NCBI RefSeq assembly: GCF_000315625.1
Contig: NW_005434591.1
Coordinates: forward strand, 1 to 34,152
DNA length: 34,152 nucleotides
Direction: 5' to 3'
Origin: Guillardia theta CCMP2712
Lineage: Eukaryota > Protista > Cryptophyta
Position numbers and translations under genes: made by a program. The first letter of the stretch is position 1, and each line of letters opens with the position of its first letter. The notes below the pieces were generated by a model. It had not been told where the DNA came from, did no database searches, and was given only the letters and a program-made list of their open reading frames with translations. This document shows, one piece after another, positions 1 to 33,364 of this stretch.

Positions 1-120
1 GCTTCTGCTGCTTGTTACTTGATTGCCGGGTATCGCGTCTAAGGGATTTTATCCCTCCTGCATGCTCCTGCTGCTTGTTGCTTGGGCTGGCGATGCCGGG
101 TCTGCTGACGGTTGCCCACT

Positions 121-883
121 GGATTTACTGGCAGAAGGTAAAAAGTGCCTCAAGCAAAATAAAGCAGGAACAAGCTAACCTCCTGGCACACAGCGCACAG
201 CGAGAAGCTGCACAATCACACACAAAACACAAGCCCGAAAAGAACCAGCACTGCTGGCACCCAGACGTAAATCCTATTGCTTCCCAGACGCGGCATCGCC
301 AGCCCATGCGCGAAGCCGCGCAGACAAGCCTTCTAAGGGTCAGGCAATCAAGCAACAAGCAGCAGGAGCATGCAGGAGGGAGTATAGGATTTACTGGCAG
401 AAGGTAAAAAGTGCCTCAAGCAAAACAAAGCAGGAACAAGCTGAACCGGCAGGCACACAGTCCACAGCGAGAAGCTGCACAAACACACACAAAACACAAG
501 CCCGAAAAGAACCAGCACTGCTGGCACCCAGACGCGGCATCGCCAGCCCAAGCGCGAAGCCGCGCAGACAAGCAGCCTAAGGGTCAAGCAATCAAGCAAC
601 AAGCTATAGGATTTACTGGCAGAAGGTAAAAAGTGCCTCAAGCAAAACAAAGCAGGAACAAGCTGAACCGGCAGGTACACAGTCCACAGCGAGAAGCTGC
701 ACAAACACACACAAAACACAAGCCCGAAAAGAGCCAGCACTGCTGGCACCCAGACGCGGCATCGCCAGCCCAAGCGCGAAGCCGCGCCGACAAGCAGCCG
801 AAGGGTCAAGCAATCAAGCAACAAGCAGCAGGAGCACGCAGGAGGAATAACATCCCTTAGACGCGATACCCGGAGGCAGCCGA
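121..883 (-). repeat. Three head-to-tail copies of the element's 3' terminal segment (121-381, 383-604, 605-883)
   Basis: Direct repeats, each starting at or just before ggatttactggcagaaggtaaaaagtgcctcaag. Confidence 0.9.
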
Positions 884-2538
884 CTGACCACTGTCAGTCG
901 AGACGTCCGCTGCCGCCACAAAGCGGGCGGCCGCGGACGGAGAAAGGGCAGCCGCCGACAAGGAGCCGGCGTTGCCCGGGGGTCCGCCTGGGGCAGCGGA
1001 CGGAGGGAGGCTGGACACAGGAACACGGTACCGCTCGAGGTAGTCCTCCTCGCTAGCCTCCGAGTCAGCGGTAGCCAAGTCAGTGTTAGCCGCCCGTGAC
1101 GGCGGCGACGCCGCGGCAATGCCCAAGGACCGGCGTGACCCGACCGATGCCGGGGAGGAAGCAGGCGAGCTCGGACCAGCAGCAAGCACCCCAGTGGTGT
1201 CGAGCTCTCCGGAGGCACCCGACGTCACAGTGAGGGACGGAGACGCCTCGCCAGCTCCGCGCCGATCGTCGGGGCCACTCGAAGGGTGGCCCCCATCGGA
1301 GTCGGAGACCTCCGGCGAAGACTCCTCGGGCGACTCGACAAAGTCCGAGGAGGAGCTGTCCTCTGGCTCGAGAAGTGCTTGCGCCCGCAAGGNNNNNNNN
1401 NNNNNNNNNNNNNNNNNNNNNNNNNNNNNNNNNNNNNNNNNNNNNNNNNNNNNNNNNNNNNNNNNNNNNNNNNNNNNNNNNNNNNNNNNNNNNNNNNNNN
1501 NNNNNNNNNNNNNNNNNNNNNNNNNNNNNNNNNNNNNNNNNNNNNNNNNNNNNNNNNNNNNNNNNNNNNNNNNNNNNNNNNNNNNNNNNNNNNNGTCAGG
1601 ATGCAGGGTACCGTCCGTCGAGATGGCAAGAGGGATGAACGCTCGAGGAGGAGTAGTCATGGCATATGCAGCGCGATGTTTGCGAATCTTCTCAGACGCT
1701 GCAACATGGAGGGCGTCGAGGTTGACCTCCCCCCACTTGGTCAGGTCGGCAGAGCTACCAATGTAAGGGTGGACCAACGTCACGTCCGCCATCAAGCCCT
1801 CGTACTGCTCGGACCCTCGATCGCGGATTCCAGGAATGTGGATATCGCCCTTCATCTTGCGGCCATGAGGATTGGAGGGTACCTGCCGTCGAGAACGAGG
1901 ATCCCCCACTGTATCGATGACGCTCTGAAGACCAGCTTCGTTCAGCATCGACCGAATCGTACGAGTAAGGTTGTCATGCGCCGTGGGAAGCTTGGAGGAT
2001 CGGCGTTTGCAGGTCTGGAGATGATGTGCAGCAACGGAGGGATCGAGCTCGCGCTGACATCCATCACATTCCGTCGGACACTGGCAGATCGGCATGCCAT
2101 GGAGATAGCAGTCGAGCATCTGAGCATAGCGGTGCGGGAAGGCCTTGAGGGGGTAGTAGCTCGAGACTCGCATCGGAGAGTGGCTCAGGTCACGCTCAGG
2201 AAAATGAGCGAAGATGGTAGACTGCAAGACCCTATCCTGCGACTTGAGCGAGTGTGTCCTGCGGCTGTGCAAGGTGAGGATATCACGCTGCTGATCGGTC
2301 AGCGCAGCGCGAGCATGCACATGGCGAGGGAAGACGCGCATGACAAGAGGGGTCACATTTCGCTGCGCAGGGGGAGGAATGAAGTGCTCATGAGACGAGT
2401 CGACGAGAGCGCGCAAACCAGGGATGTGTACCACAGATGCCGGGGGGCGTCCTGCATCATCAGGCACAGCAGCCGGGGCAGGTGGGATCGCCGCACCATC
2501 TGCAGCCGGTGCAGGAGCCTTGACACGACGGTAGAGGA
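857..2538 (-). CDS. 5'-truncated retroelement ORF: CCHC zinc knuckle + restriction-like endonuclease + acidic Ser/Ala-rich tail (no RT in window)
   Basis: Motifs CDGC-x10-HHLQTC, AHD, KGD, ADVTLVHP, EKIRKH and FIPLAISTDG match the C-terminus of RLE-type (CRE-like) non-LTR elements. The frame is open from the junction at 2538, and the stop (GYRV*) lies inside the terminal repeat. The ORF contains a 202-N gap. Confidence 0.8.
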
Positions 2539-2817
2539 TCGGCTGCCTCCGGGTATCGCGTCTAAGGGATGTTATTCCTCCTGCATGCTCCTGCTGCTTG
2601 TTGCTTGATTGCTTGACCCTTAGGCTGCTTGTCTGCGCGGCTTCGCGCTTGGGCTGGCGGTGCCGCGTCTGGGTGCCAGCAGTGCTGGTTCTTTTCGGGC
2701 TTGTGTTTTGTGTGTGCTTGTGCAGCTTCTCGCTGTGGACTGTGTGCCTGCCGGTTCAGCTTGTTCCTGCTTTGTTTTGCTTGAGGCATTTTTTACCTTC
2801 TGCCAGTAAATCCTATA
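2539..2817 (+). repeat. 279-bp inverted copy of 605-883
   Basis: Reverse complement of 605-883 with a few substitutions. Confidence 0.9.
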
Positions 2818-2923
2818 CTAGCGTCCGCTCGAGGTGTACAATGGATTTACTGGCAGAAGTGCCTCAAGCAAAATAAAGCAGGAACAAGCTAAACCTCCTG
2901 GCACACAGCGCACGAGGTAGTCC

Positions 2924-3543
2924 TCGCTCATTTTCCTGAGCGTGACCTGAGCCACTCTCCGATGCGAGTCTCGAGCTACTACCCCCTCAATGCCTTCCCG
3001 CACCGCTATGCTCAGATGCTCGACTGCTATCTCCATGGCATGCCGATCTGCCAGTGTCCGACGGAATGTGATGGATGTCAGCGCGAGCTCGATCCCTCCG
3101 TTGCTGCACATCATCTCCAGACCTGCAAACGCCGATCCTCCAAGCTTCCCACGGCGCATGACAACCTTACTCGTACGATTCGGTCGATGCTGAACGAAGC
3201 TGGTCTTCAGAGCGTCATCGATACAGTGGGGGATCCTCGTTCTCGACGGCAGGTACCCTCCAATCCTCATGGCCGCAAGATGAAGGGCGATATCCACATC
3301 CCTGGAATCCGCGATCGAGGGTCTGAGCAGTACGAGGGCTTGATGGCGGACGTGACGTTGGTCCACCCTTACATTGGTAGCTCTGCCGACCTGACCAAGT
3401 GGGGGGAGGTCAACCTCGACGCCCTCCATGTTGCAGCGTCTGAGAAGATTCGCAAACATCGCGCTGCATATGCTATGACTACTCCTCCTCGAGCGTTCAT
3501 CCCTCTTGCCATCTCGACGGACGGTACCCTGCATCCTGACACC
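2924..3543 (+). pseudogene. Second fragment of the RLE ORF (truncated at both ends)
   Basis: Near-identical to the reverse complement of 1595-2212; corresponds to ORF 2962..3582. Confidence 0.8.
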
Positions 3544-3646
3544 GCTGTGTGCCTAGGTATAGGATTTACTGGCAGAAGGTAAAAAGTGCCTCAAGCAAAA
3601 CAAAGCAGGAACAAGCTGAACCTCCTGGCACACAGTCCACAGCGAG

Positions 3647-4456
3647 AAGATGAAGGGCGATATCCACATCCCTGGAATCCGCGATCGAGGGTCTGAGCAG
3701 TACGAGGGCTTGATGGCGGACGTGACGTTGGTCCACCCTTACATTGGTAGCTCTGCCGACCTGACCAAGTGGGGGGAGGTCAACCTCGACGCCCTCCATG
3801 TTGCAGCGTCTGAGAAGATTCGCAAACATCGCGCTGCATATGTTTCTGCTATGACTCCTCCTCCTCGAGCGTTCATCCCTCTTGCCATCCGATGATCTCG
3901 ACGGACGGTACCCTGCATCCTGACACCCTCCCGAGTCCGCTTCATCTGGTATCTCGCGGACATCATTGCTCAGCGCTCGATGCCTCTTGAGGATGCGGCG
4001 TTTGGTCGGCACTTCGTGCCTGATGACGGCCCTGCTGCTGAGGTCTTGGCTCGCAAACGCGCCGCCACCTATCAGCGCCTCACTATGCAGCTGACGCTGG
4101 AGGCGCTCTTGTCTGGTGCGAGGCGCATGACGCCCTTGCGGGCGCAAGCACTTCTGCAGCGGACTCAGGGATGCTGGGCACAGGAGCACGGTACCGTCTT
4201 CCTCACTAGCCTCCGGGCCGAGTCAGCGGAAGCCGAGACAAACACCACCCGTGACGGCGGCGACGCCGCCGGCATCAATGCCCAGGGACCGGGGCTGGGC
4301 GGCATCGGAGGCAGCTCGGACCACTGGGCCAGCTGCAAGCACCCCATTGGTGTCGAGCTCTCAGGCTCCGGAGGCATCCGACGTCCGATCGGCTCCAGTC
4401 TGGATGTTTCCCCCATGGGAGTCCGAGACTTCCGGGGAAGACTCCTCGGGCTACTC
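3647..4456 (+). pseudogene. Third, frameshifted fragment of the RLE ORF
   Basis: Identical KMKGD...KIRKH segment, then small insertions (near 3842, 3890 and 3931) that break the frame. It continues TLRFIWYLADII...YQRLTMQL, followed by a scrambled and partly inverted tail. Confidence 0.75.
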
Positions 4457-5168
4457 GCTTGTTCCTGCTTTGTTTTGCTTGAGGCACTTTTTACCTTCTG
4501 CCAGTAAGTAAACTTAGTGCCTCAAGCAAAACAAAAAACTCAGGAGATTTACTGGCAGAAGGTAAAAAGTGCCTCCGAAGCAAAACAAAGCAGGAACAAG
4601 CTAAACCCGCTTGCAACAAAGCAGGAGGTTTAGCTTGAACAAAGCAGGAGCCTGTTTAGCTTGTTCCTCCCCTCCCCTGAGAAACGAAATACAAATATCG
4701 TCAATTTGTTCATGAAGAAACGACTTCCACGAAAGACCCCCGGAGAATGGTCTGGCAGCGTCCGCGGCCCGTGACGGTACGCGATCACCGTCACTCCGAG
4801 GCGGCCCTGAATGGCCCGGCGGCCGGCCGCGCCGCTTCCGCGGCGCTGGTACCGGGGAGTCCCGGGCCGGAGCCGCCGGCGCCCGGATCGGCCTGTGACA
4901 CCCGGGCCCCGGATCGGACCGGCGTACCGTGAACCGGTAGTACGGTCGGACTCACCGTTACAACGCGGCCCCGGCGGCTCGGAGCTGAGTCAGCCCGGCT
5001 GGCCCAGTGGCCCTCATCCCGGATCATCGGATAGGATTCAAGTTCGGAACTTGAGTAATACAAGTTGGAATTCTCCCGAAATAGCGCGATGGCGACAAAG
5101 GGGCGTGGGCGTGGGCGTGGGCAAGGGGCAGTGGTAGTGGCAGGAGCAGAGGCAAGCAGAGGTAGGGT

Positions 5169-5306
5169 CCGATCAGGAGCAGAGGTAGGGTCCGATCAGG
5201 AGCAGGGGTGTGGCCCGATCAGGAGCAGAGGCAGCGTCCGATCAGGAGCAGGGGTGTGGCCCGATCAGGAGCAGAGGCAGCGTCCGATCAGGAGCAGAGG
5301 CAGGGG
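5169..5306. repeat. 23-bp-period minisatellite, 6 units, core ccgatcaggagcag
   Basis: Core starts at 5169, 5192, 5215, 5238, 5261 and 5284. Confidence 0.9.
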
Positions 5307-5432
5307 CAGGGGCAGGGTCGGGGAAATTCAGTTGGTGCGATGATGTGAGAGAATTGATGGTATGCAAACGGAAGAGGGAGTGGTGCTTTCATGATTGAGA
5401 GCTGTGCTGAACGGGTTTCAATTCAGAAAGGA

Positions 5433-5742: not shown

Positions 5743-6489
5743 AGGAAGAAGGAGAGAAGTTTCAGAGCACAACGTTGATGGAGGAGATTCTGTTTCATTA
5801 CACGCCGTATGCTTCATCTTGTTTGTCATATGCTTCATCTTGTTTGTCATTCTGTTTCTTTTCGTATCAAGCTTCTGCTACTTTCGTGCGGCGAACTCTT
5901 GAACTACCGTCGAGAAAGAGCGTGAAGAGTTTCTGAGGGAGGATGATTGCGTGGAGTGCTGCACGAATGTTGAATGCCTGCTCTAGCGTTGCTTAACCTG
6001 CTGGCCCTGCTGAGGTTCGGTAGAAAGGATCATCCTGCACGAAAGTTGTCCAGAGCTTCAAGCACCACCTAAGCCGAGTTCCACGGTGTCTGATCACCAT
6101 AGCTCGAGCTTCTCGCGTGATGCTGTTCCAGTCAGTGACTGCCAGCATGCTCAATGCCGCGGCTGCTGCATCATGCTGCTGCCGCCGCATCAAGACTACA
6201 TCAGGTTCACCTCAAAGCGGCTGCTGCATGAAACTTGAGTGACTTGGCCGGGCCCGGAGTTTTTCACTGCCAGGCCGCCTACGGCGCCGTTGACGGAGGC
6301 CGCTGAGCGCTCAGCCCGGCCCGGCCGCTCCTCGCCGCCCCGGGGCCCGCCGCTCCCGGCGGGGCCGCCGGGCCGACCCCCTCACAGAGCCTCGGAGTCC
6401 GATCGGATCAAATCATTTTGCCACGGTTACAAACAGTAACGTTCAAACAATTATCGTCTTCACATTTTCATCCCTATCGGTGCTCGTCC

Positions 6490-9726
<3,237 letters not shown>

Positions 9727-29098: not shown

Positions 29099-32000
29099 AT
29101 GAACGACGAGGAGCTTCTGTCGCACATCTACAGGAACGAGGCTCTGACAGCACGAGGGTTCGATGGTTATCGTCAGAAACACGATCAGTTCAAGCTGGGA
29201 GCCATCGCTGAGCTCATCGACAACGCCATGGAAGCTCAGTCGACAAAGGTGATGCTCAACATCGACGAAGCGACCGGAATCCTCGAAGTGCTCGATGACG
29301 GAGTAGGAGTGCCGCGCAAGGTGGTCAAGACGATGGTCATCGCCGGGAGAGGAAACAAGAAATCCAAGAACAACTACGGGGTTGGCTTCAAGTGCGGTAG
29401 CTTGGGGATAGGCAACGACGTCCTTGTGCTCTCCAAGACGGTCGAGTGTAACTGCGGAGTTTACTTCAAGGTCATCCAGGGGGAGGACGTGAAGTGCACG
29501 TGCGCGAAGGGCGAGCGAAGGCACGTGCGAAGCCTCATCTACCTCACCGCAGGCTCGCGCCTGGAGGGGGACGACGATTCGCTGCAGATCCCGATGATCT
29601 TCTGGCGGGGGGACGGCAAAGCTCTGGTGACGTTGGAGGATCTGAAGGAGATGCCGGAGCAGGAGGAGAGGGGGATCTCAGACGCGGGAGTCAGTCACCT
29701 GATCAAGTTCGTCTGCACGCACTTCCACCTCCATACCCTCAAGGCCATTCAAACGAGTTTCGATCGCATCAAAGGCAAAACCGGCACCCTCGTCCTCATC
29801 GCTCACCTCAACGACAACGAGCTGGCGCAGCAGGTAGAGCTCGACAAGCCTCGCAGCGACATCATCGCCAAGCAAGGGGACGCGAACCTCGTTCGCGAGG
29901 ACCGGAAGCCGCCCTTCAACGTGGGAACGGACGTGCCTCAAGACTATTCGCTGCGCTCCTACTGCGAGATGCTGTACGCGCGTAGCCCGCTCATGAAGAT
30001 GCAGATCTACATCGCAGAGAAGATCGTCGAGTTGAGGTGTGTGGAGGACATGTGTGAGCCCCGGGAGATGGTGAGTTACGTCGAGGCCCTCGAGGTGAAG
30101 GGTGAGACCCACAAGCTGGAGGTTAAGCTTGGGTTCTCACCCGATGCTTGTACTCGTGGTGTCTGCGGGTTCTTCGTCTACTTTGACAAGGGACACCAGC
30201 TTCCTCCCCGCCTCATCTCTGCGTATCATCGAGTCGGGTTGATGACGAACAGAGCTGGGAAGGTGAACGGGATGGTGGGAGAAGTGATCCTGTCGCACAA
30301 GGCGGTGAAGGTGGATCAAGGGAAGCAGCGCTTTGAGTACTCAGCGACGCTGAAAGCCGTGGACTCGATTCTCAACTCCTGCTGCGATCTCTACGAGGAA
30401 GCGTATCAGCTTCTGCGGGACCAGCACGATGCCTTGATGCGGGACCTGGAGGAGAGGGCGTTCTCGCAGGGAAGGATCGTATGGGCCCAGTACACCAACC
30501 AGGGCCCCTTCCGCCACTGGCCGGGTATCGTGCTCAACCGCTACGACCGTGAGGTGATGCGCTACATGCCGAGTGAGCTCTTTCAGCCCTCCAACCCCAA
30601 CGCCTTCCCCCGCGGCCCCCACCCTTCTCACCTCCTCGTCGAGTGCCTCGAGACCCGCGAGAAGATGTGGTGCAAGGTGTCGGATCTGGAGCCCTTCGAC
30701 AGCGACAAGGGGGAGAAGATGGAGAAGGAAGCAGTCAAGAGCGTTGAGAGCGACTTGAAGGAGAGCCTGAAGGCAGCGATCAAGCAGGCGAAGAAGGTGC
30801 TGGAGGAGTACGACGATGTGATTGAGTGTAGTATCCGCTGCCATCTGTGCACCGCATGGCGAACATTCAGAGGATCGCGAGCCGATGCAGAGGAGAATGA
30901 CTGGGAGTGCAGCATGGGCTACATCGTTGACGGAGAGACAAGATTCGACTGCGATCTGCCTTCGACGAACAAGCCGCGTGGGCAGTCGCACGGGCTGTTA
31001 AAGGACAGACCGGACAAGAAGCCGGTGAAGGCCGAGACGACGATCGTCAAGTCAGAGAGCGTGGCAGTGAAGGTGGAGAGAAGCAACGGGGATGAGAGGA
31101 AGGAGAGCTTGTTGAGGCGAATGCCTGCCAAAGAGTTCCTCTCGCTTCACTCCTCCCTCGTCCACAAGTGGGAGAGCGTGAGCAACGTCTCGGTGATGCA
31201 GGACGGGAGGGTCAGAACGTTGTCAGGCGTCTGGCGGAAGAACCCTGTGAAGATCAAGGAGTACAAACATGACAACTTCGACGAGTTTCTCAAAAACTTT
31301 CAGGTCATGAACACCTCTCTCTCTCACCGCAACATCATCAGCTCCCTCGGCGTCCTCCACAACGACGTCGAGCAAACCTTCGGCCTGATGATCAGCAGTC
31401 TACCCAGCGTGAAGTTGAAGATCAGCAACTCCCAGCTCGACGCGTCTCTGACAGTCAGGCTGGACGTGATGGAGAGAGTGTGCATGGCGCTGGCTTATCT
31501 TCATCAGCATGACCTCTTCCTCTCCAACCTCTCCTGGGAGTCCGTCCTGCTGGGGACTGACAACCATCCCTTCATCTCAGACTTCTCTCCCATGCAAGAA
31601 GCCTCTGCCGTCCTCAACTTGCGCTGGGAGCAGCTTCCGACCAACAGTAGAGCTGTTAGGAAGGGAGGACAGGAACAGCCCGCAGACACGCTCTTGACCC
31701 GCAGGCTCCTGATGCTCGTCGACCTGGAGCACCTGGGAGCTTTCATGCACTGCGTGGGATACGGGAGGGAGCCGGACGTGAATCTGGACCTGCGGTTGGA
31801 CTTGGACGAGGACGGAGAGTACGGGCCCTTGAAGAGGCACGACAAGCTGCTCGATTTGATCACAGATTGCCTCTACGTGGAGGAGGAGGAGGGGGAAGAG
31901 GGTTGGCCAAGGGGCGTGGAGGACGTGCTCAATGCGATCAGGTCCATCCATGAGGCGAAGACAGAGCAGGGGGGGCTGGAGGAGCTGCTGGAAGAGCTCC

Positions 32001-33364
32001 ATGAACACAAGTCCTCCTCCGATCGCTCCTTCCTGTGCTACAAGGTGCTCGACGCGCAGGACCTGTACTTGCTACGGGATACTAGCATGAAGGAAGGGCT
32101 TTTCTCCTCCTGCTTCGGGTGCCAGTCGAAGCTCCCTCATGCCGTAGCTGCCTTCACCCAGGAGGCTGCGGAGCCGATCAAGTCAAGTGAGGTTCTGCTG
32201 GTAAGAGACTGGAAGCTTGCCATGTGGAAGGCGAGCAGCGTCGAGCGAGCCAACGGATTTCTTCCCCTCGTGCTCGTCGTCGACCTCCGGAAGCTCCGCA
32301 CCAACAGCTCCTTCAGAGTCTGCGACGAGCGCGGGCAGCTGTTGAAGCCTAGCAAAGTGCTGCAGTCCAAAGAGAAGGTGCTGCTCTCGGTCAAGAGGAG
32401 CATGGTACCTCAGGCCATGGTGGACGTGTGGGACTGGAGGTCGAAGGCGTACAAGGAGTTTCACAAGGCGATGGAGGGGAGCAGGTCGAGACTCTCAGAC
32501 TTCGACGGCTGGAGCTCGAGAGTCGACCTGGTGCTCAAGGACAAGACGAGCGGCAGGAGCACAGCTGGAAAGCTGCTGGAGGGTCTGGAGTCGGACCCCT
32601 CCTGCGACCTCTTGAAGAAGCTTCAGGAGGTGATAGCGATCAGCGAGGGCAGGTGGAGGAAGGCCTTCCACCAGCTCAAGGCTGGCTGGACTTTCCTTCA
32701 GCTGGGCAGCAACCGGCTGCTGGTCGGAGAGTTTGACCAGAGGACGGTGAGGGCCGAGAGAGTCGCGTTTGCGATGAACCTGTTCGCTCGCGATCACATC
32801 CAAATAGGTTTCAACGGGTCGGTCGAGCGAGACTCGAGCCTGTGCATCGTCTACCTTTGCTATCAGCACATGGGGGTGACGAGGGAAGGGGGCAGGGGCG
32901 CGTGGAAGAAGCTCCTGATCGCTCTCTCCGATATCTTCCTGCTTGAGTGCATCAGGAACCGCAAGTTGTTCATCCATCGGGACAAGTCGCCCCGAGGCCC
33001 CGAGGAGAACGTCTGGCTCGTCCTGATCCTCATCGTCATGATGCGGCTGTTCAAGTGCTCGCTCAAGGACGCCCAGGGGAGGTGGCGGGACAAGGCGGGA
33101 GAGGGGGAGGAGGAGGCTCTGCATCCTCTTCACCTCCTCATCCTCCAAGACATCGAGCAAGACTTGAAGTCCGGCAGTCTCACACTGCACAAGAACGATC
33201 GTCGCTCCGCCTACCTCAAGGCCAAGGAACTGTCGCAGCCCCTGCTGCAGCCCTCGAAGCGACGAGCTCCTGCACCCGAGGAGAGTCGGAGCCCTCTCTC
33301 GGCTAAGAAGAGCAAGATGACTCACCCCGTCCCTGTGACGCAGCAGAGGGGGGAAAAAGACTGA
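29099..33364 (+). CDS. MORC-family GHKL ATPase fused to PWWP, zf-CW, pseudokinase and an ART-like/unknown C-terminus; single 1421-aa ORF
   Basis: GAIAELIDNA, DDGVG, YGVGFK, DYSLRSYCEMLY and KQRF (MORC); IVWAQY...HWPGIV (PWWP); CHLCTAWR...WECSM...CDLP (CW); HRNII...ALAYLH...ISDFS (kinase fold). Confidence 0.9.
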   Translation: MNDEELLSHIYRNEALTARGFDGYRQKHDQFKLGAIAELIDNAMEAQSTKVMLNIDEATGILEVLDDGVGVPRKVVKTMVIAGRGNKKSKNNYGVGFKCGSLGIGNDVLVLSKTVECNCGVYFKVIQGEDVKCTCAKGERRHVRSLIYLTAGSRLEGDDDSLQIPMIFWRGDGKALVTLEDLKEMPEQEERGISDAGVSHLIKFVCTHFHLHTLKAIQTSFDRIKGKTGTLVLIAHLNDNELAQQVELDKPRSDIIAKQGDANLVREDRKPPFNVGTDVPQDYSLRSYCEMLYARSPLMKMQIYIAEKIVELRCVEDMCEPREMVSYVEALEVKGETHKLEVKLGFSPDACTRGVCGFFVYFDKGHQLPPRLISAYHRVGLMTNRAGKVNGMVGEVILSHKAVKVDQGKQRFEYSATLKAVDSILNSCCDLYEEAYQLLRDQHDALMRDLEERAFSQGRIVWAQYTNQGPFRHWPGIVLNRYDREVMRYMPSELFQPSNPNAFPRGPHPSHLLVECLETREKMWCKVSDLEPFDSDKGEKMEKEAVKSVESDLKESLKAAIKQAKKVLEEYDDVIECSIRCHLCTAWRTFRGSRADAEENDWECSMGYIVDGETRFDCDLPSTNKPRGQSHGLLKDRPDKKPVKAETTIVKSESVAVKVERSNGDERKESLLRRMPAKEFLSLHSSLVHKWESVSNVSVMQDGRVRTLSGVWRKNPVKIKEYKHDNFDEFLKNFQVMNTSLSHRNIISSLGVLHNDVEQTFGLMISSLPSVKLKISNSQLDASLTVRLDVMERVCMALAYLHQHDLFLSNLSWESVLLGTDNHPFISDFSPMQEASAVLNLRWEQLPTNSRAVRKGGQEQPADTLLTRRLLMLVDLEHLGAFMHCVGYGREPDVNLDLRLDLDEDGEYGPLKRHDKLLDLITDCLYVEEEEGEEGWPRGVEDVLNAIRSIHEAKTEQGGLEELLEELHEHKSSSDRSFLCYKVLDAQDLYLLRDTSMKEGLFSSCFGCQSKLPHAVAAFTQEAAEPIKSSEVLLVRDWKLAMWKASSVERANGFLPLVLVVDLRKLRTNSSFRVCDERGQLLKPSKVLQSKEKVLLSVKRSMVPQAMVDVWDWRSKAYKEFHKAMEGSRSRLSDFDGWSSRVDLVLKDKTSGRSTAGKLLEGLESDPSCDLLKKLQEVIAISEGRWRKAFHQLKAGWTFLQLGSNRLLVGEFDQRTVRAERVAFAMNLFARDHIQIGFNGSVERDSSLCIVYLCYQHMGVTREGGRGAWKKLLIALSDIFLLECIRNRKLFIHRDKSPRGPEENVWLVLILIVMMRLFKCSLKDAQGRWRDKAGEGEEEALHPLHLLILQDIEQDLKSGSLTLHKNDRRSAYLKAKELSQPLLQPSKRRAPAPEESRSPLSAKKSKMTHPVPVTQQRGEKD

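What the first reader, a model, noticed from the sequence alone, without database searches (positions are those of the whole stretch)
605..4507. RLE retroelement whose truncated copies are capped by an inverted copy of its own 3' end
Seen: unit 605-2817 has 279-bp inverted ends. The ORF stop lies inside the repeat, so the repeat is the element's 3' end/UTR, and the second copy is fused inverted to the 5' truncation point at 2538/2539. The same geometry recurs at 2843-3543 (inverted terminus of ~70 bp, then body) and 3558-4507 (inverted terminus of ~90 bp, body, terminus), with a different cap length and breakpoint each time. Known: tandem and inverted 3'-end arrangements are typical of Penelope-like elements, whereas the encoded domain is the CCHC+RLE of CRE-like non-LTR elements. 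Inference: a possibly undescribed integration mode in which both ends of the cut prime reverse transcription from element 3' ends and the two cDNAs are joined, giving pseudo-TIR insertions.
Basis: partly seen in the sequence, partly recalled or inferred. Interest (0 to 1): 0.8.

Follow-up and report, generated by a model that had tools for sequence, protein, structure and literature searches.

The report
Nested truncated LINE copies, not pseudo-TIRs
The 279-base inverted repeat is real, but it most likely marks two separate, oppositely oriented insertions of one abundant R2-like jumping gene of the alga Guillardia theta inside an island where that element keeps inserting into itself, rather than a new way of integrating.

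Summary
Window 605-883 and 2539-2817 are a 279-nt inverted repeat (97%), the ORF stop (857-859) lies inside it, and the repeat is the 3' end of a retroelement. The element is a ~5.8-kb non-LTR retrotransposon of Guillardia theta with an R2-type reverse transcriptase and a CCHC + restriction-like endonuclease.

The proposed integration mode (both ends of the cut priming from element 3' ends) is not supported.
- The two arms are no more alike (97.1%) than random copy pairs (median 96.9%). At least five of their eight differences are polymorphisms shared with other copies, so the cap is not a copy of the unit's own 3' end.
- The "cap" at 2843-2912 has its own 6-bp target duplication and is a separate tiny insertion.
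- The unit 3558-4507 is a mosaic of pieces of different age.
- In 222 kb of such islands (71% this family), 43 duplication-bounded insertions are plain 5'-truncated pieces (median 66 nt).
- Of 49 cap-like junctions, 22 are nested or adjacent insertions, 6 look like twin priming and 21 are unresolved. The window's A and C are among the unresolved.
- Both candidate single-event capped insertions turned out to be two events each.

A minor both-ends-priming pathway is not excluded. Earlier scan notes flagged the same family on other DNA of this genome.

The parts
1..120 (+). Mosaic of short sense-strand 3'-UTR fragments of the element (about R5553-5577, R5514-5572, R5612-5636) at the contig start. 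R is my 5,782-bp working reference.
121..382 (-). 3'-terminal piece (R5539-5778) of a variant 3'-UTR type, 85% identical to the reference
383..604 (-). 222-nt 3'-terminal piece (R5561-5782), abutting the next copy's terminus with no base between
605..2541 (-). 5'-truncated copy (R3843-5782). It holds the C-terminal linker, CCHC knuckle, RLE nuclease, low-complexity tail and 3' UTR. The stop codon is at 857-859 and the N gap at 1393-1594.
2539..2817 (+). 279-nt 3'-terminal piece (R5504-5782): the 'cap', head-to-head with the previous copy, sharing 3 nt at the junction
2825..2928 (-). Short host fragment of the element (about R5339-5356), split by a tiny insertion. The 6-bp duplication CGAGGT lies at 2830-2835 and 2913-2918.
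2843..2912 (-). ~70-nt 3'-terminal piece of the variant UTR type (the 'cap' of unit B). It lacks the last 4 nt and has 7 extra bases (gtacaat) at its terminus.
2921..3543 (+). Internal body fragment R4170-4790 (CCHC + RLE coding), 99% identical to 1595-2214, with no 3' end of its own
3558..3652 (-). 95-nt 3'-terminal piece (R5688-5782), abutting the next segment
3647..4155 (+). Older body fragment R4526-5011 (94% to the reference, with indels)
4156..4457 (-). Inverted, diverged fragment R5045-5394 (74-87% to the reference)
   Evidence: (D9, D13, D14)
4457..4610 (.). Three further short terminal fragments: 4457-4507 sense R5724-5774; 4516-4535 and 4546-4610 antisense

Best explanation
**What it is.** The first 4.7 kb of the window is the edge of a self-nesting island of one young, abundant R2-type (RLE) non-LTR retrotransposon of Guillardia theta. 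The element is ~5.8 kb. A 71%-identical relative has a single ORF of about 1,500 aa holding an RT with a YADN motif, a CCHC knuckle and a PD-(D/E)xK nuclease. The 3' end is ...CCAGTAAATCCTATA, with no poly(A).

**How it behaves (shown).** The element integrates by target-primed reverse transcription, with extreme 5' truncation and target duplications of 2-12 bp. Its copies lie almost only inside such islands, in either orientation.

**How the repeat arose (inferred).** The 279-nt inverted repeat is a 1.94-kb truncated copy lying head-to-head with a separate 279-nt 3'-UTR-length piece. The two came from different source copies. The missing host flank was probably lost through later insertions or a target-site deletion.

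**The other two 'capped' units.** One is a tiny insertion with its own duplication. The other is a mosaic of pieces of different age.
For: **Element identity**
- RT hit PF00078, E 8.8e-6, below Pfam's cut-off.
- A family profile finds R2 proteins first in the PDB: E 6.6e-14 and 1.2e-13, against L1 ORF2p at 0.004.
- The predicted C-terminal domain (pLDDT 82) matches R2 structures first, at Foldseek E 8e-6 to 5e-3, and then Prp8.
- Conserved C..C...HH..C, HD, GD, D.T..HP and K columns.

**Island context**
- 222 kb of sampled island DNA is 71% this family, with 214 3' termini. 47% of the terminal pieces are under 100 nt, and there is a second class at 200-299 nt.
- On every contig with several hits, the hits fall in one stretch of at most about 30 kb.

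**Plain insertions dominate**
- 43 simple insertions into other copies are bounded by duplications. Median insertion length is 66 nt and median duplication is 6 bp, in both orientations.

**Cap-like junctions**
- Of 49, 22 show host continuity, 6 are twin-priming-like and 21 are unresolved.
- L009 3150-5834 mimics unit A but is nested, with a 6-bp duplication.
- Arms of unit A: 97.1% identical against a median of 96.9% for 1,020 random pairs. At least 5 of the 8 differences are shared polymorphisms.
- Unit B's cap has its own duplication.
Against: - For unit A and for the cap at 3558-3652 I could not find the host flank that a simple nested insertion requires. The nearest candidate, window 1-120, overlaps the cap by about 155 nt and is a different UTR variant.
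- Head-to-head junctions (68) outnumber the terminus-to-host junctions (48) that nested insertions should pair them with.
- The abutments 382/383, 604/605 and 2538/2539 have no host bases between the pieces. Proven adjacent insertions elsewhere leave 8-11 nt.
- No read evidence for the locus.
Confidence: 0.6

Rival explanations
1. **Both-ends priming.** In some integrations the second (top-strand) DNA end also primes on the 3' end of an element RNA, often a short UTR-length one. After running off that RNA, the enzyme jumps onto the first cDNA and so primes second-strand synthesis. The product has 3' termini facing outward at both ends.
For: - 21 of 49 cap-like junctions are not explained by host continuity.
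- UTR-length caps are enriched among them.
- Four long copies (window, L012, L013, L017) carry a 246-282-nt inverted terminal piece directly at their 5' end.
- Junctions have 0-3 nt of overlap.
- Penelope-like elements show this geometry (PMC8557442).
- End-to-end template jumping by the R2 enzyme is established knowledge. I recall it and did not check it in a paper here.
Against: - No confirmed case lies within one target duplication among about 48 verified insertions, giving an upper 95% bound of about 6%.
- L015 is better read as a large copy inserted into an older 31-nt piece (GTAAAA duplicated). L018 has 8 nt of host (taccctgc) between its two parts.
- The arms of unit A come from different source lineages, so two different RNAs would be needed.
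- In three of the four analogues the far side runs into N or the locus edge and cannot be tested.
Confidence: 0.2
2. **DNA-level rearrangement after insertion.** Deletions, fold-back or inverted duplications, and end joining inside a repeat-dense, possibly centromeric island brought unrelated pieces together.
For: - Large inverted duplications exist in the islands, for example L021 4173-5666 against 6436-7241.
- There is local tandem duplication of a tiny insertion with its flank at L010 8279-8383.
- Pieces of clearly different age abut in unit C.
- 14 junctions join internal 3'-side breaks on opposite strands.
Against: Breakpoints at exact 3' termini are far commoner than random breakage would give: 214 termini among 511 segments. 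That points to retrotransposition as the main source of junctions.
Confidence: 0.12
3. **Assembly artefact.** The scaffold join across the N gap (1393-1594), or chimeric assembly of 97-99% identical copies, created the apparent unit.
For: - The gap lies between the two arms.
- The window is at a contig start inside an island, and the islands are full of N runs.
- The reads tool gave no bridging record.
Against: - The cap/body junction 2538/2539 lies in uninterrupted sequence (1595-4700).
- Similar junctions with small duplications, far shorter than a read, recur in many contigs.
- The gap length equals the true interval.
Confidence: 0.05

Closest known systems
R2 and other restriction-like-endonuclease (RLE) non-LTR retrotransposons
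   Same: RT followed by a linker, a CCHC zinc knuckle and a PD-(D/E)xK nuclease. It shows 5' truncation and short target duplications and has no LTRs. R2 proteins are the best sequence-profile and fold matches among solved structures.
   Different: - No single target site. 43 insertion sites gave no strong motif, only that no duplication ends in A.
- Insertions are confined to self-nesting islands.
- No poly(A) or simple-repeat tail.
- No ribozyme match.
- YADN instead of YADD.
- Half of the terminal pieces are under 100 nt.
- Clade (CRE, NeSL, R4, Hero, Utopia, R2) not determined.
Penelope-like elements: pseudo-LTRs and an adjacent inverted 5'-truncated copy (Craig et al. 2021, PMC8557442)
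   Same: Tandem 3'-end arrays and head-to-head inverted truncated copies with 3' termini facing outward. There are extra bases at termini (7-22 nt here; a 30-40-bp 'tail' in PLEs).
   Different: No GIY-YIG nuclease and no hammerhead ribozyme, and the RT is of R2 type. Here most such arrangements resolve into separate insertions with their own duplications.
L1 twin priming (5' inversion); from my own knowledge, Ostertag and Kazazian 2001
   Same: Six junctions in the islands have an inverted segment lying immediately upstream, in element coordinates, of the direct 3' segment. Examples are L006 1564-1979 and L008 6122-6565.
   Different: The window's caps start at the 3' terminus itself and duplicate sequence also present in the body's own 3' end, which twin priming on one RNA does not give.
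Self-nesting LINE clusters such as Zepp of Chlorella, and centromeric retrotransposon nests; from my own knowledge
   Same: Copies inserted into copies in one compartment per chromosome-sized scaffold.
   Different: Zepp is not an RLE element as far as I recall. Whether these islands are centromeres is untested.

Membership tests
RLE-type (R2-like) non-LTR retrotransposon | Reverse transcriptase of the non-LTR type | tested here: met
   PF00078 at E 8.8e-6, below Pfam's cut-off. A family profile hits R2 proteins at E 6.6e-14 and 1.2e-13, ahead of L1 ORF2p at 0.004.
RLE-type (R2-like) non-LTR retrotransposon | C-terminal CCHC zinc knuckle followed by a PD-(D/E)xK restriction-like endonuclease | tested here: met
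   Conserved C..C...HH..C, HD, GD, D.T..HP and invariant K in 16 sequences. The model (pLDDT 82) matches R2 structures first at E 8e-6, then Prp8.
RLE-type (R2-like) non-LTR retrotransposon | TPRT footprints: fixed 3' end, variable 5' truncation, target duplications, no LTR | tested here: met
   214 3' termini and 43 duplication-bounded insertions of 27-2,533 nt.
RLE-type (R2-like) non-LTR retrotransposon | Sequence-specific target site (usual in the group, not strictly defining) | tested here: not met
   No strong consensus around 43 insertion sites. A few sites recur near GGTACC.
CRE clade | RT groups with CRE/SLACS/CZAR in a phylogeny | not tested
   No reference CRE, NeSL, R4, Hero or Utopia sequences were available through the tools. 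All distant relatives found are unnamed metagenomic proteins.
Penelope-like elements | GIY-YIG endonuclease and telomerase-like RT | tested here: not met
   The nuclease is RLE. Pfam finds no GIY-YIG.
Penelope-like elements | Hammerhead ribozyme in the terminal repeat | tested here: not met
   No ribozyme match at E up to 0.1 in two loci holding long copies.
TIR DNA transposon | Fixed-length terminal inverted repeats and a transposase | tested here: not met
   Cap lengths range from 27 to several thousand nt. The longest copies (L026, L032) start with unrelated 5' sequence and no inverted terminus. The ORF is RT + RLE.
   0 confirmed among about 48 verified insertions. L015 and L018 each resolve into two events.
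   Arms 97.1% identical against a median of 96.9% for random pairs. At least 5 of 8 differences are shared polymorphisms.

The most novel reading that the evidence does not exclude
A minority of integrations of this R2-type element use both DNA ends as primers on separate element RNAs, often a UTR-length one, and join the two cDNAs. This would give Penelope-like outward-facing inverted 3' ends. It would be the first RLE LINE shown to make such insertions, and it would suggest a route to second-strand priming.
Probability: 0.18. Interest if true: 0.6.

Novelty: new member of a known kind. Interest (0 to 1): 0.3.

Why it matters
- If the both-ends-priming reading were true, it would bear on the poorly understood second half of LINE integration. 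It would also link RLE LINEs to the odd tandem/inverted insertions of Penelope-like elements.
- As it stands, the finding shows how nested insertions of a hyper-truncating LINE can mimic terminal inverted repeats. That is a practical warning for transposon annotation.
- The family itself is of moderate interest. It is R2-like, apparently undescribed in the papers I could search, and confined to one self-nesting island per scaffold.

Tried and rejected
**Tool attempts that gave little**
- **Reads.** Only Logan unitigs and one low-depth RNA run were on offer. No listed record bridges 2538/2539 or the gap, so this says nothing for or against the assembly.
- **Genome letters.** The sample consists of islands chosen because they contain the element.
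- **Single-sequence searches.** Pfam on the window's own ORF pieces and phmmer against the PDB gave nothing. A profile and a fold were needed.
- **Word-based protein search.** It found only the family itself.
- **Papers.** No paper on Guillardia LINEs turned up in the library.

**Readings rejected**
- **TIR DNA transposon with internal deletions.** The ORF is RT + RLE, and the longest copies have no inverted 5' end.
- **Snap-back copying of the unit's own cDNA.** The arms differ as much as random copies do.
- **L015 2653-7592 as a single capped event.** The 13 nt after its terminus continue the 27-nt piece, with GTAAAA duplicated.
- **L018 8072-8990 as a single event.** 8 nt of host lie between its parts.
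- **Two tandem composites read as template jumps.** L010 7560-7700 and L010 8255-8460 hold host fragments between the pieces.
- **Window 1-120 as the lost host flank of unit A.** It overlaps the cap by about 155 nt and is a different UTR variant.
- **A 9-nt match left of 3558.** It is an internal similarity of the element, R4490 against R4760.
Full report

The repeat finder gives arms 605-883 and 2539-2817, 279 nt, 97% complementary. The long minus-strand ORF ends at 857-859, inside the left arm. The frame stays open across the breakpoint 2538/2539 into the right arm. An 80-nt probe across that breakpoint matches only itself in the 87-Mb genome. About 35 other copies match its body half up to window 2541, so 3 nt are shared by the two sides.

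The repeat is the 3' end of a very abundant family. A search with 605-883 gives 630 candidate places, with the best at 97-98% identity.

**2. The gap**

The N run 1393-1594 is 202 nt. In 9 of 11 copies that span it, the interval between the same flanking sequences is exactly 202 bp. The other two have 199 and 208 bp (coordinates). One frame is open on both sides, and L007 4699-6882 reads through the region as a 727-aa ORF. The letters are therefore compatible with continuity and with the frame.

Whether both sides are one physical copy is not known. The reads tool offered only short unitigs and a thin RNA run, and no listed record bridges the gap or the junction.

**3. What the element is**

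Earlier notes of this scan and the protein search identify the genome as Guillardia theta CCMP2712.

By walking upstream through longer copies I put together a 5,782-bp working reference, R, made of L026:634-1501 plus L015:2679-7592. These are natural copies, not a consensus. Two copies with different upstream flanks start at the same base, GGTTTTCCTGC.... Only about five copies reach the 5' region.

- L015 encodes an RT with a YADN motif. Pfam RVT_1 scores E 8.8e-6, below its cut-off.
- A 71%-identical relative, P0004, has one ORF of 1,511 aa.
- An exhaustive HMMER search finds unnamed metagenomic proteins aligned over RT through nuclease at 25-27% identity.
- A profile of these hits R2 proteins first among solved structures: E 6.6e-14 and 1.2e-13, with L1 ORF2p at 0.004.
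- The C-terminal 325 aa align with conserved C..C...HH..C, HD, GD, D.T..HP and an invariant K.
- The same region folds with pLDDT 82 and matches R2 structures first (Foldseek E 8e-6 to 5e-3), then Prp8.
- There is no ribozyme match.

This is an R2-type RLE LINE. The clade ('CRE-like') could not be tested for lack of reference sequences.

**4. Context**

On every contig with several hits, the hits fall within one stretch of at most about 30 kb.

In the 36 loci I could fetch plus the window's first 5 kb there are 222 kb of non-N sequence, and 71% of it is this family. It holds 511 segments and 214 3' termini. 47% of the terminal pieces are shorter than 100 nt. A second class lies at 200-299 nt and drops sharply after 300, which is roughly the 3' UTR. 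The rest of the window carries ordinary genes: a MORC-like ATPase, an anoctamin and a Zn2Cys6 protein.

**5. How copies insert**

Because hosts are themselves copies, the uninterrupted host sequence is known. That lets insertions be recognised by host continuity.

I found 43 simple insertions of a 3'-terminal piece bounded by a duplication of up to 12 bp (median 6). One event had none. The median insertion length is 66 nt; 28 are in the host's orientation and 15 are opposite. There is no strong target motif. These are plain 5'-truncated TPRT products.

**6. The cap geometry genome-wide**

I listed 49 junctions of the form [antisense piece starting at the 3' terminus][sense segment] with at most 10 nt between.

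- Host continuity at BLAST level, or an exact host match of 10 nt or more, explains 21.
- Reading the sequence explains one more, L018.
- Six have the twin-priming signature, with the inverted segment ending where the direct one begins.
- 21 stay unresolved, including the window's unit A, the cap at 3558, and 4156-4507.

L009 3150-5834 ([a5782>3250][s5634>5782]) looks just like unit A but has the host's left half beside it and a 6-bp duplication.

Two composites seemed to be capped insertions inside one duplication.

- In L015, the 13 nt after the big copy's terminus (ACTGTAAAAAGTG) continue the 27-nt piece. The big copy therefore went into an older 31-nt insertion, duplicating GTAAAA.
- In L018, 8 nt of host (taccctgc) lie between the two parts, so they are two insertions 8 nt apart.

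That leaves none of about 48 verified insertions as a confirmed capped single event, an upper 95% bound of about 6%. Two apparent tandem composites likewise hold 11- and 18-nt host fragments.

**7. The window's three units**

- **Unit A.** The arms are 97.1% identical. Among 48 copies of the same 279 nt, the median pairwise identity is 96.9%, and 44% of random pairs are at least as alike. At at least five of the eight differing sites, both states are shared with several other copies. The cap therefore did not come from the same template as the body's 3' end. That rules out snap-back or double use of one RNA, and it is what two separate insertions would give. The 279-nt length falls in the common UTR-length class.
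- **Unit B.** The terminal piece 2843-2912 is of a variant UTR type. It lies in a short antisense host fragment, with CGAGGT on both sides and 7 extra bases at its terminus. It is not fused to the body 2921-3543.
- **Unit C.** This is [a5782>5688][s4526>5011][a5394>5045][s5724>5774], with identities to R of 94, 94, 74-87 and 98%. It is a mosaic of different ages.

**8. What remains open**

I could not find the host flank that a simple nested origin of unit A needs. Several other signals also keep a minor both-ends-priming pathway alive.

- Head-to-head junctions (68) exceed terminus-to-host junctions (48).
- Three other long copies (L012, L013, L017) carry a 246-282-nt inverted terminal piece at their 5' end. 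Their far sides run into N or the locus edge.

Possibly that pathway uses short UTR-length RNAs with an end-to-end template jump. I give it about 0.2. Craig et al. (PMC8557442) describe such tandem/inverted structures as typical of Penelope-like elements and not seen in non-LTR TPRT, so a proven case here would be of some interest.

**9. Verdict**

The element identification is right. The proposed integration mode is not supported by the tests that could be run. The most likely reading is nested, independent insertions of a hyper-truncating R2-like LINE inside a self-nesting island.

Noticed in passing
G000 contigs, e.g. C53:473-494 kb, C48:119-138 kb, C108:42-59 kb, C63:399-409 kb: All hits of this family on a given contig fall in one stretch of at most about 30 kb. 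That is one self-nesting island per scaffold, as an earlier scan note proposed (candidate centromeres).
   Followed up: partly
L001-L036: Extreme 5' truncation. 47% of 214 terminal pieces are under 100 nt, and the median verified insertion is 66 nt. A second class of 200-299 nt ends sharply near the ORF stop. It could reflect an RT stop at the UTR boundary or an abundant UTR-length template RNA.
   Followed up: partly
L018 8054-9013; L010 7560-7700; L015 2652-2679 and 7593-7605: Independent insertions land within 8-11 nt of an earlier insertion, or inside a 31-nt one. This suggests that new copies are drawn to existing 3' termini or to a few hot spots.
   Followed up: partly
R4768-4773 and R5341-5346 (window about 1027-1032 and, behind the gap, about 1612-1617): Several insertion sites recur next to the two GGTACC palindromes of the element's 3' part (L006, L014, L016, L018 twice, L021, L030, window 2830). 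This may be a weak nuclease preference. Not tested statistically.
   Followed up: no
L006 1564-1979, L008 6122-6565, L015 7761-7998, L016 1452-1518, L019 5955-6398, L023 8411-8508: Six junctions with the L1-type twin-priming signature (an inverted segment adjoining the direct 3' segment in element coordinates). None is verified by a target duplication.
   Followed up: partly
L021 3683-4404 and 7010-7486; window 121-883: Head-to-tail arrays of the last 222-244 nt with 0-1 nt between units. L021 also holds a large inverted duplication of such an array with its neighbouring copy.
   Followed up: no
L015 3446-3500 (R1636-1709): A 74-nt piece of a variant 3' UTR sits in sense orientation between CAG/CAA microsatellites inside the N-terminal coding region of the long copy. 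I did not check whether other long copies share it.
   Followed up: no
runs X2, X3, X6, X9-X11, X13-X15, X18: Freshwater, lake and runoff metagenomes hold about 45% of the words of window 2300-3700. One 819-nt contig is 99% identical to the element body (record 13). The element or its host occurs in those samples, although G. theta is, as far as I know, a marine isolate.
   Followed up: no
window 5132-5338: Seven tandem copies of a 23-bp unit (...GGTCCGATCAGGAGCAGAGG...) just outside the island.
   Followed up: no
window 29099-33364 (+): A 1,421-aa ORF combining a MORC-type GHKL ATPase (PF13589, PF17942), a PWWP domain and a protein-kinase-like segment.
   Followed up: no
L001 4868-8968, L003 3851-8488, L012 1-2915, L013 1292-4388, L017 5002-10000: Multi-kb N runs replace the upstream (RT) part of many long copies in the islands. 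The 'open frames' of 1,900-5,800 aa reported by the genome search are these N runs.
   Followed up: yes
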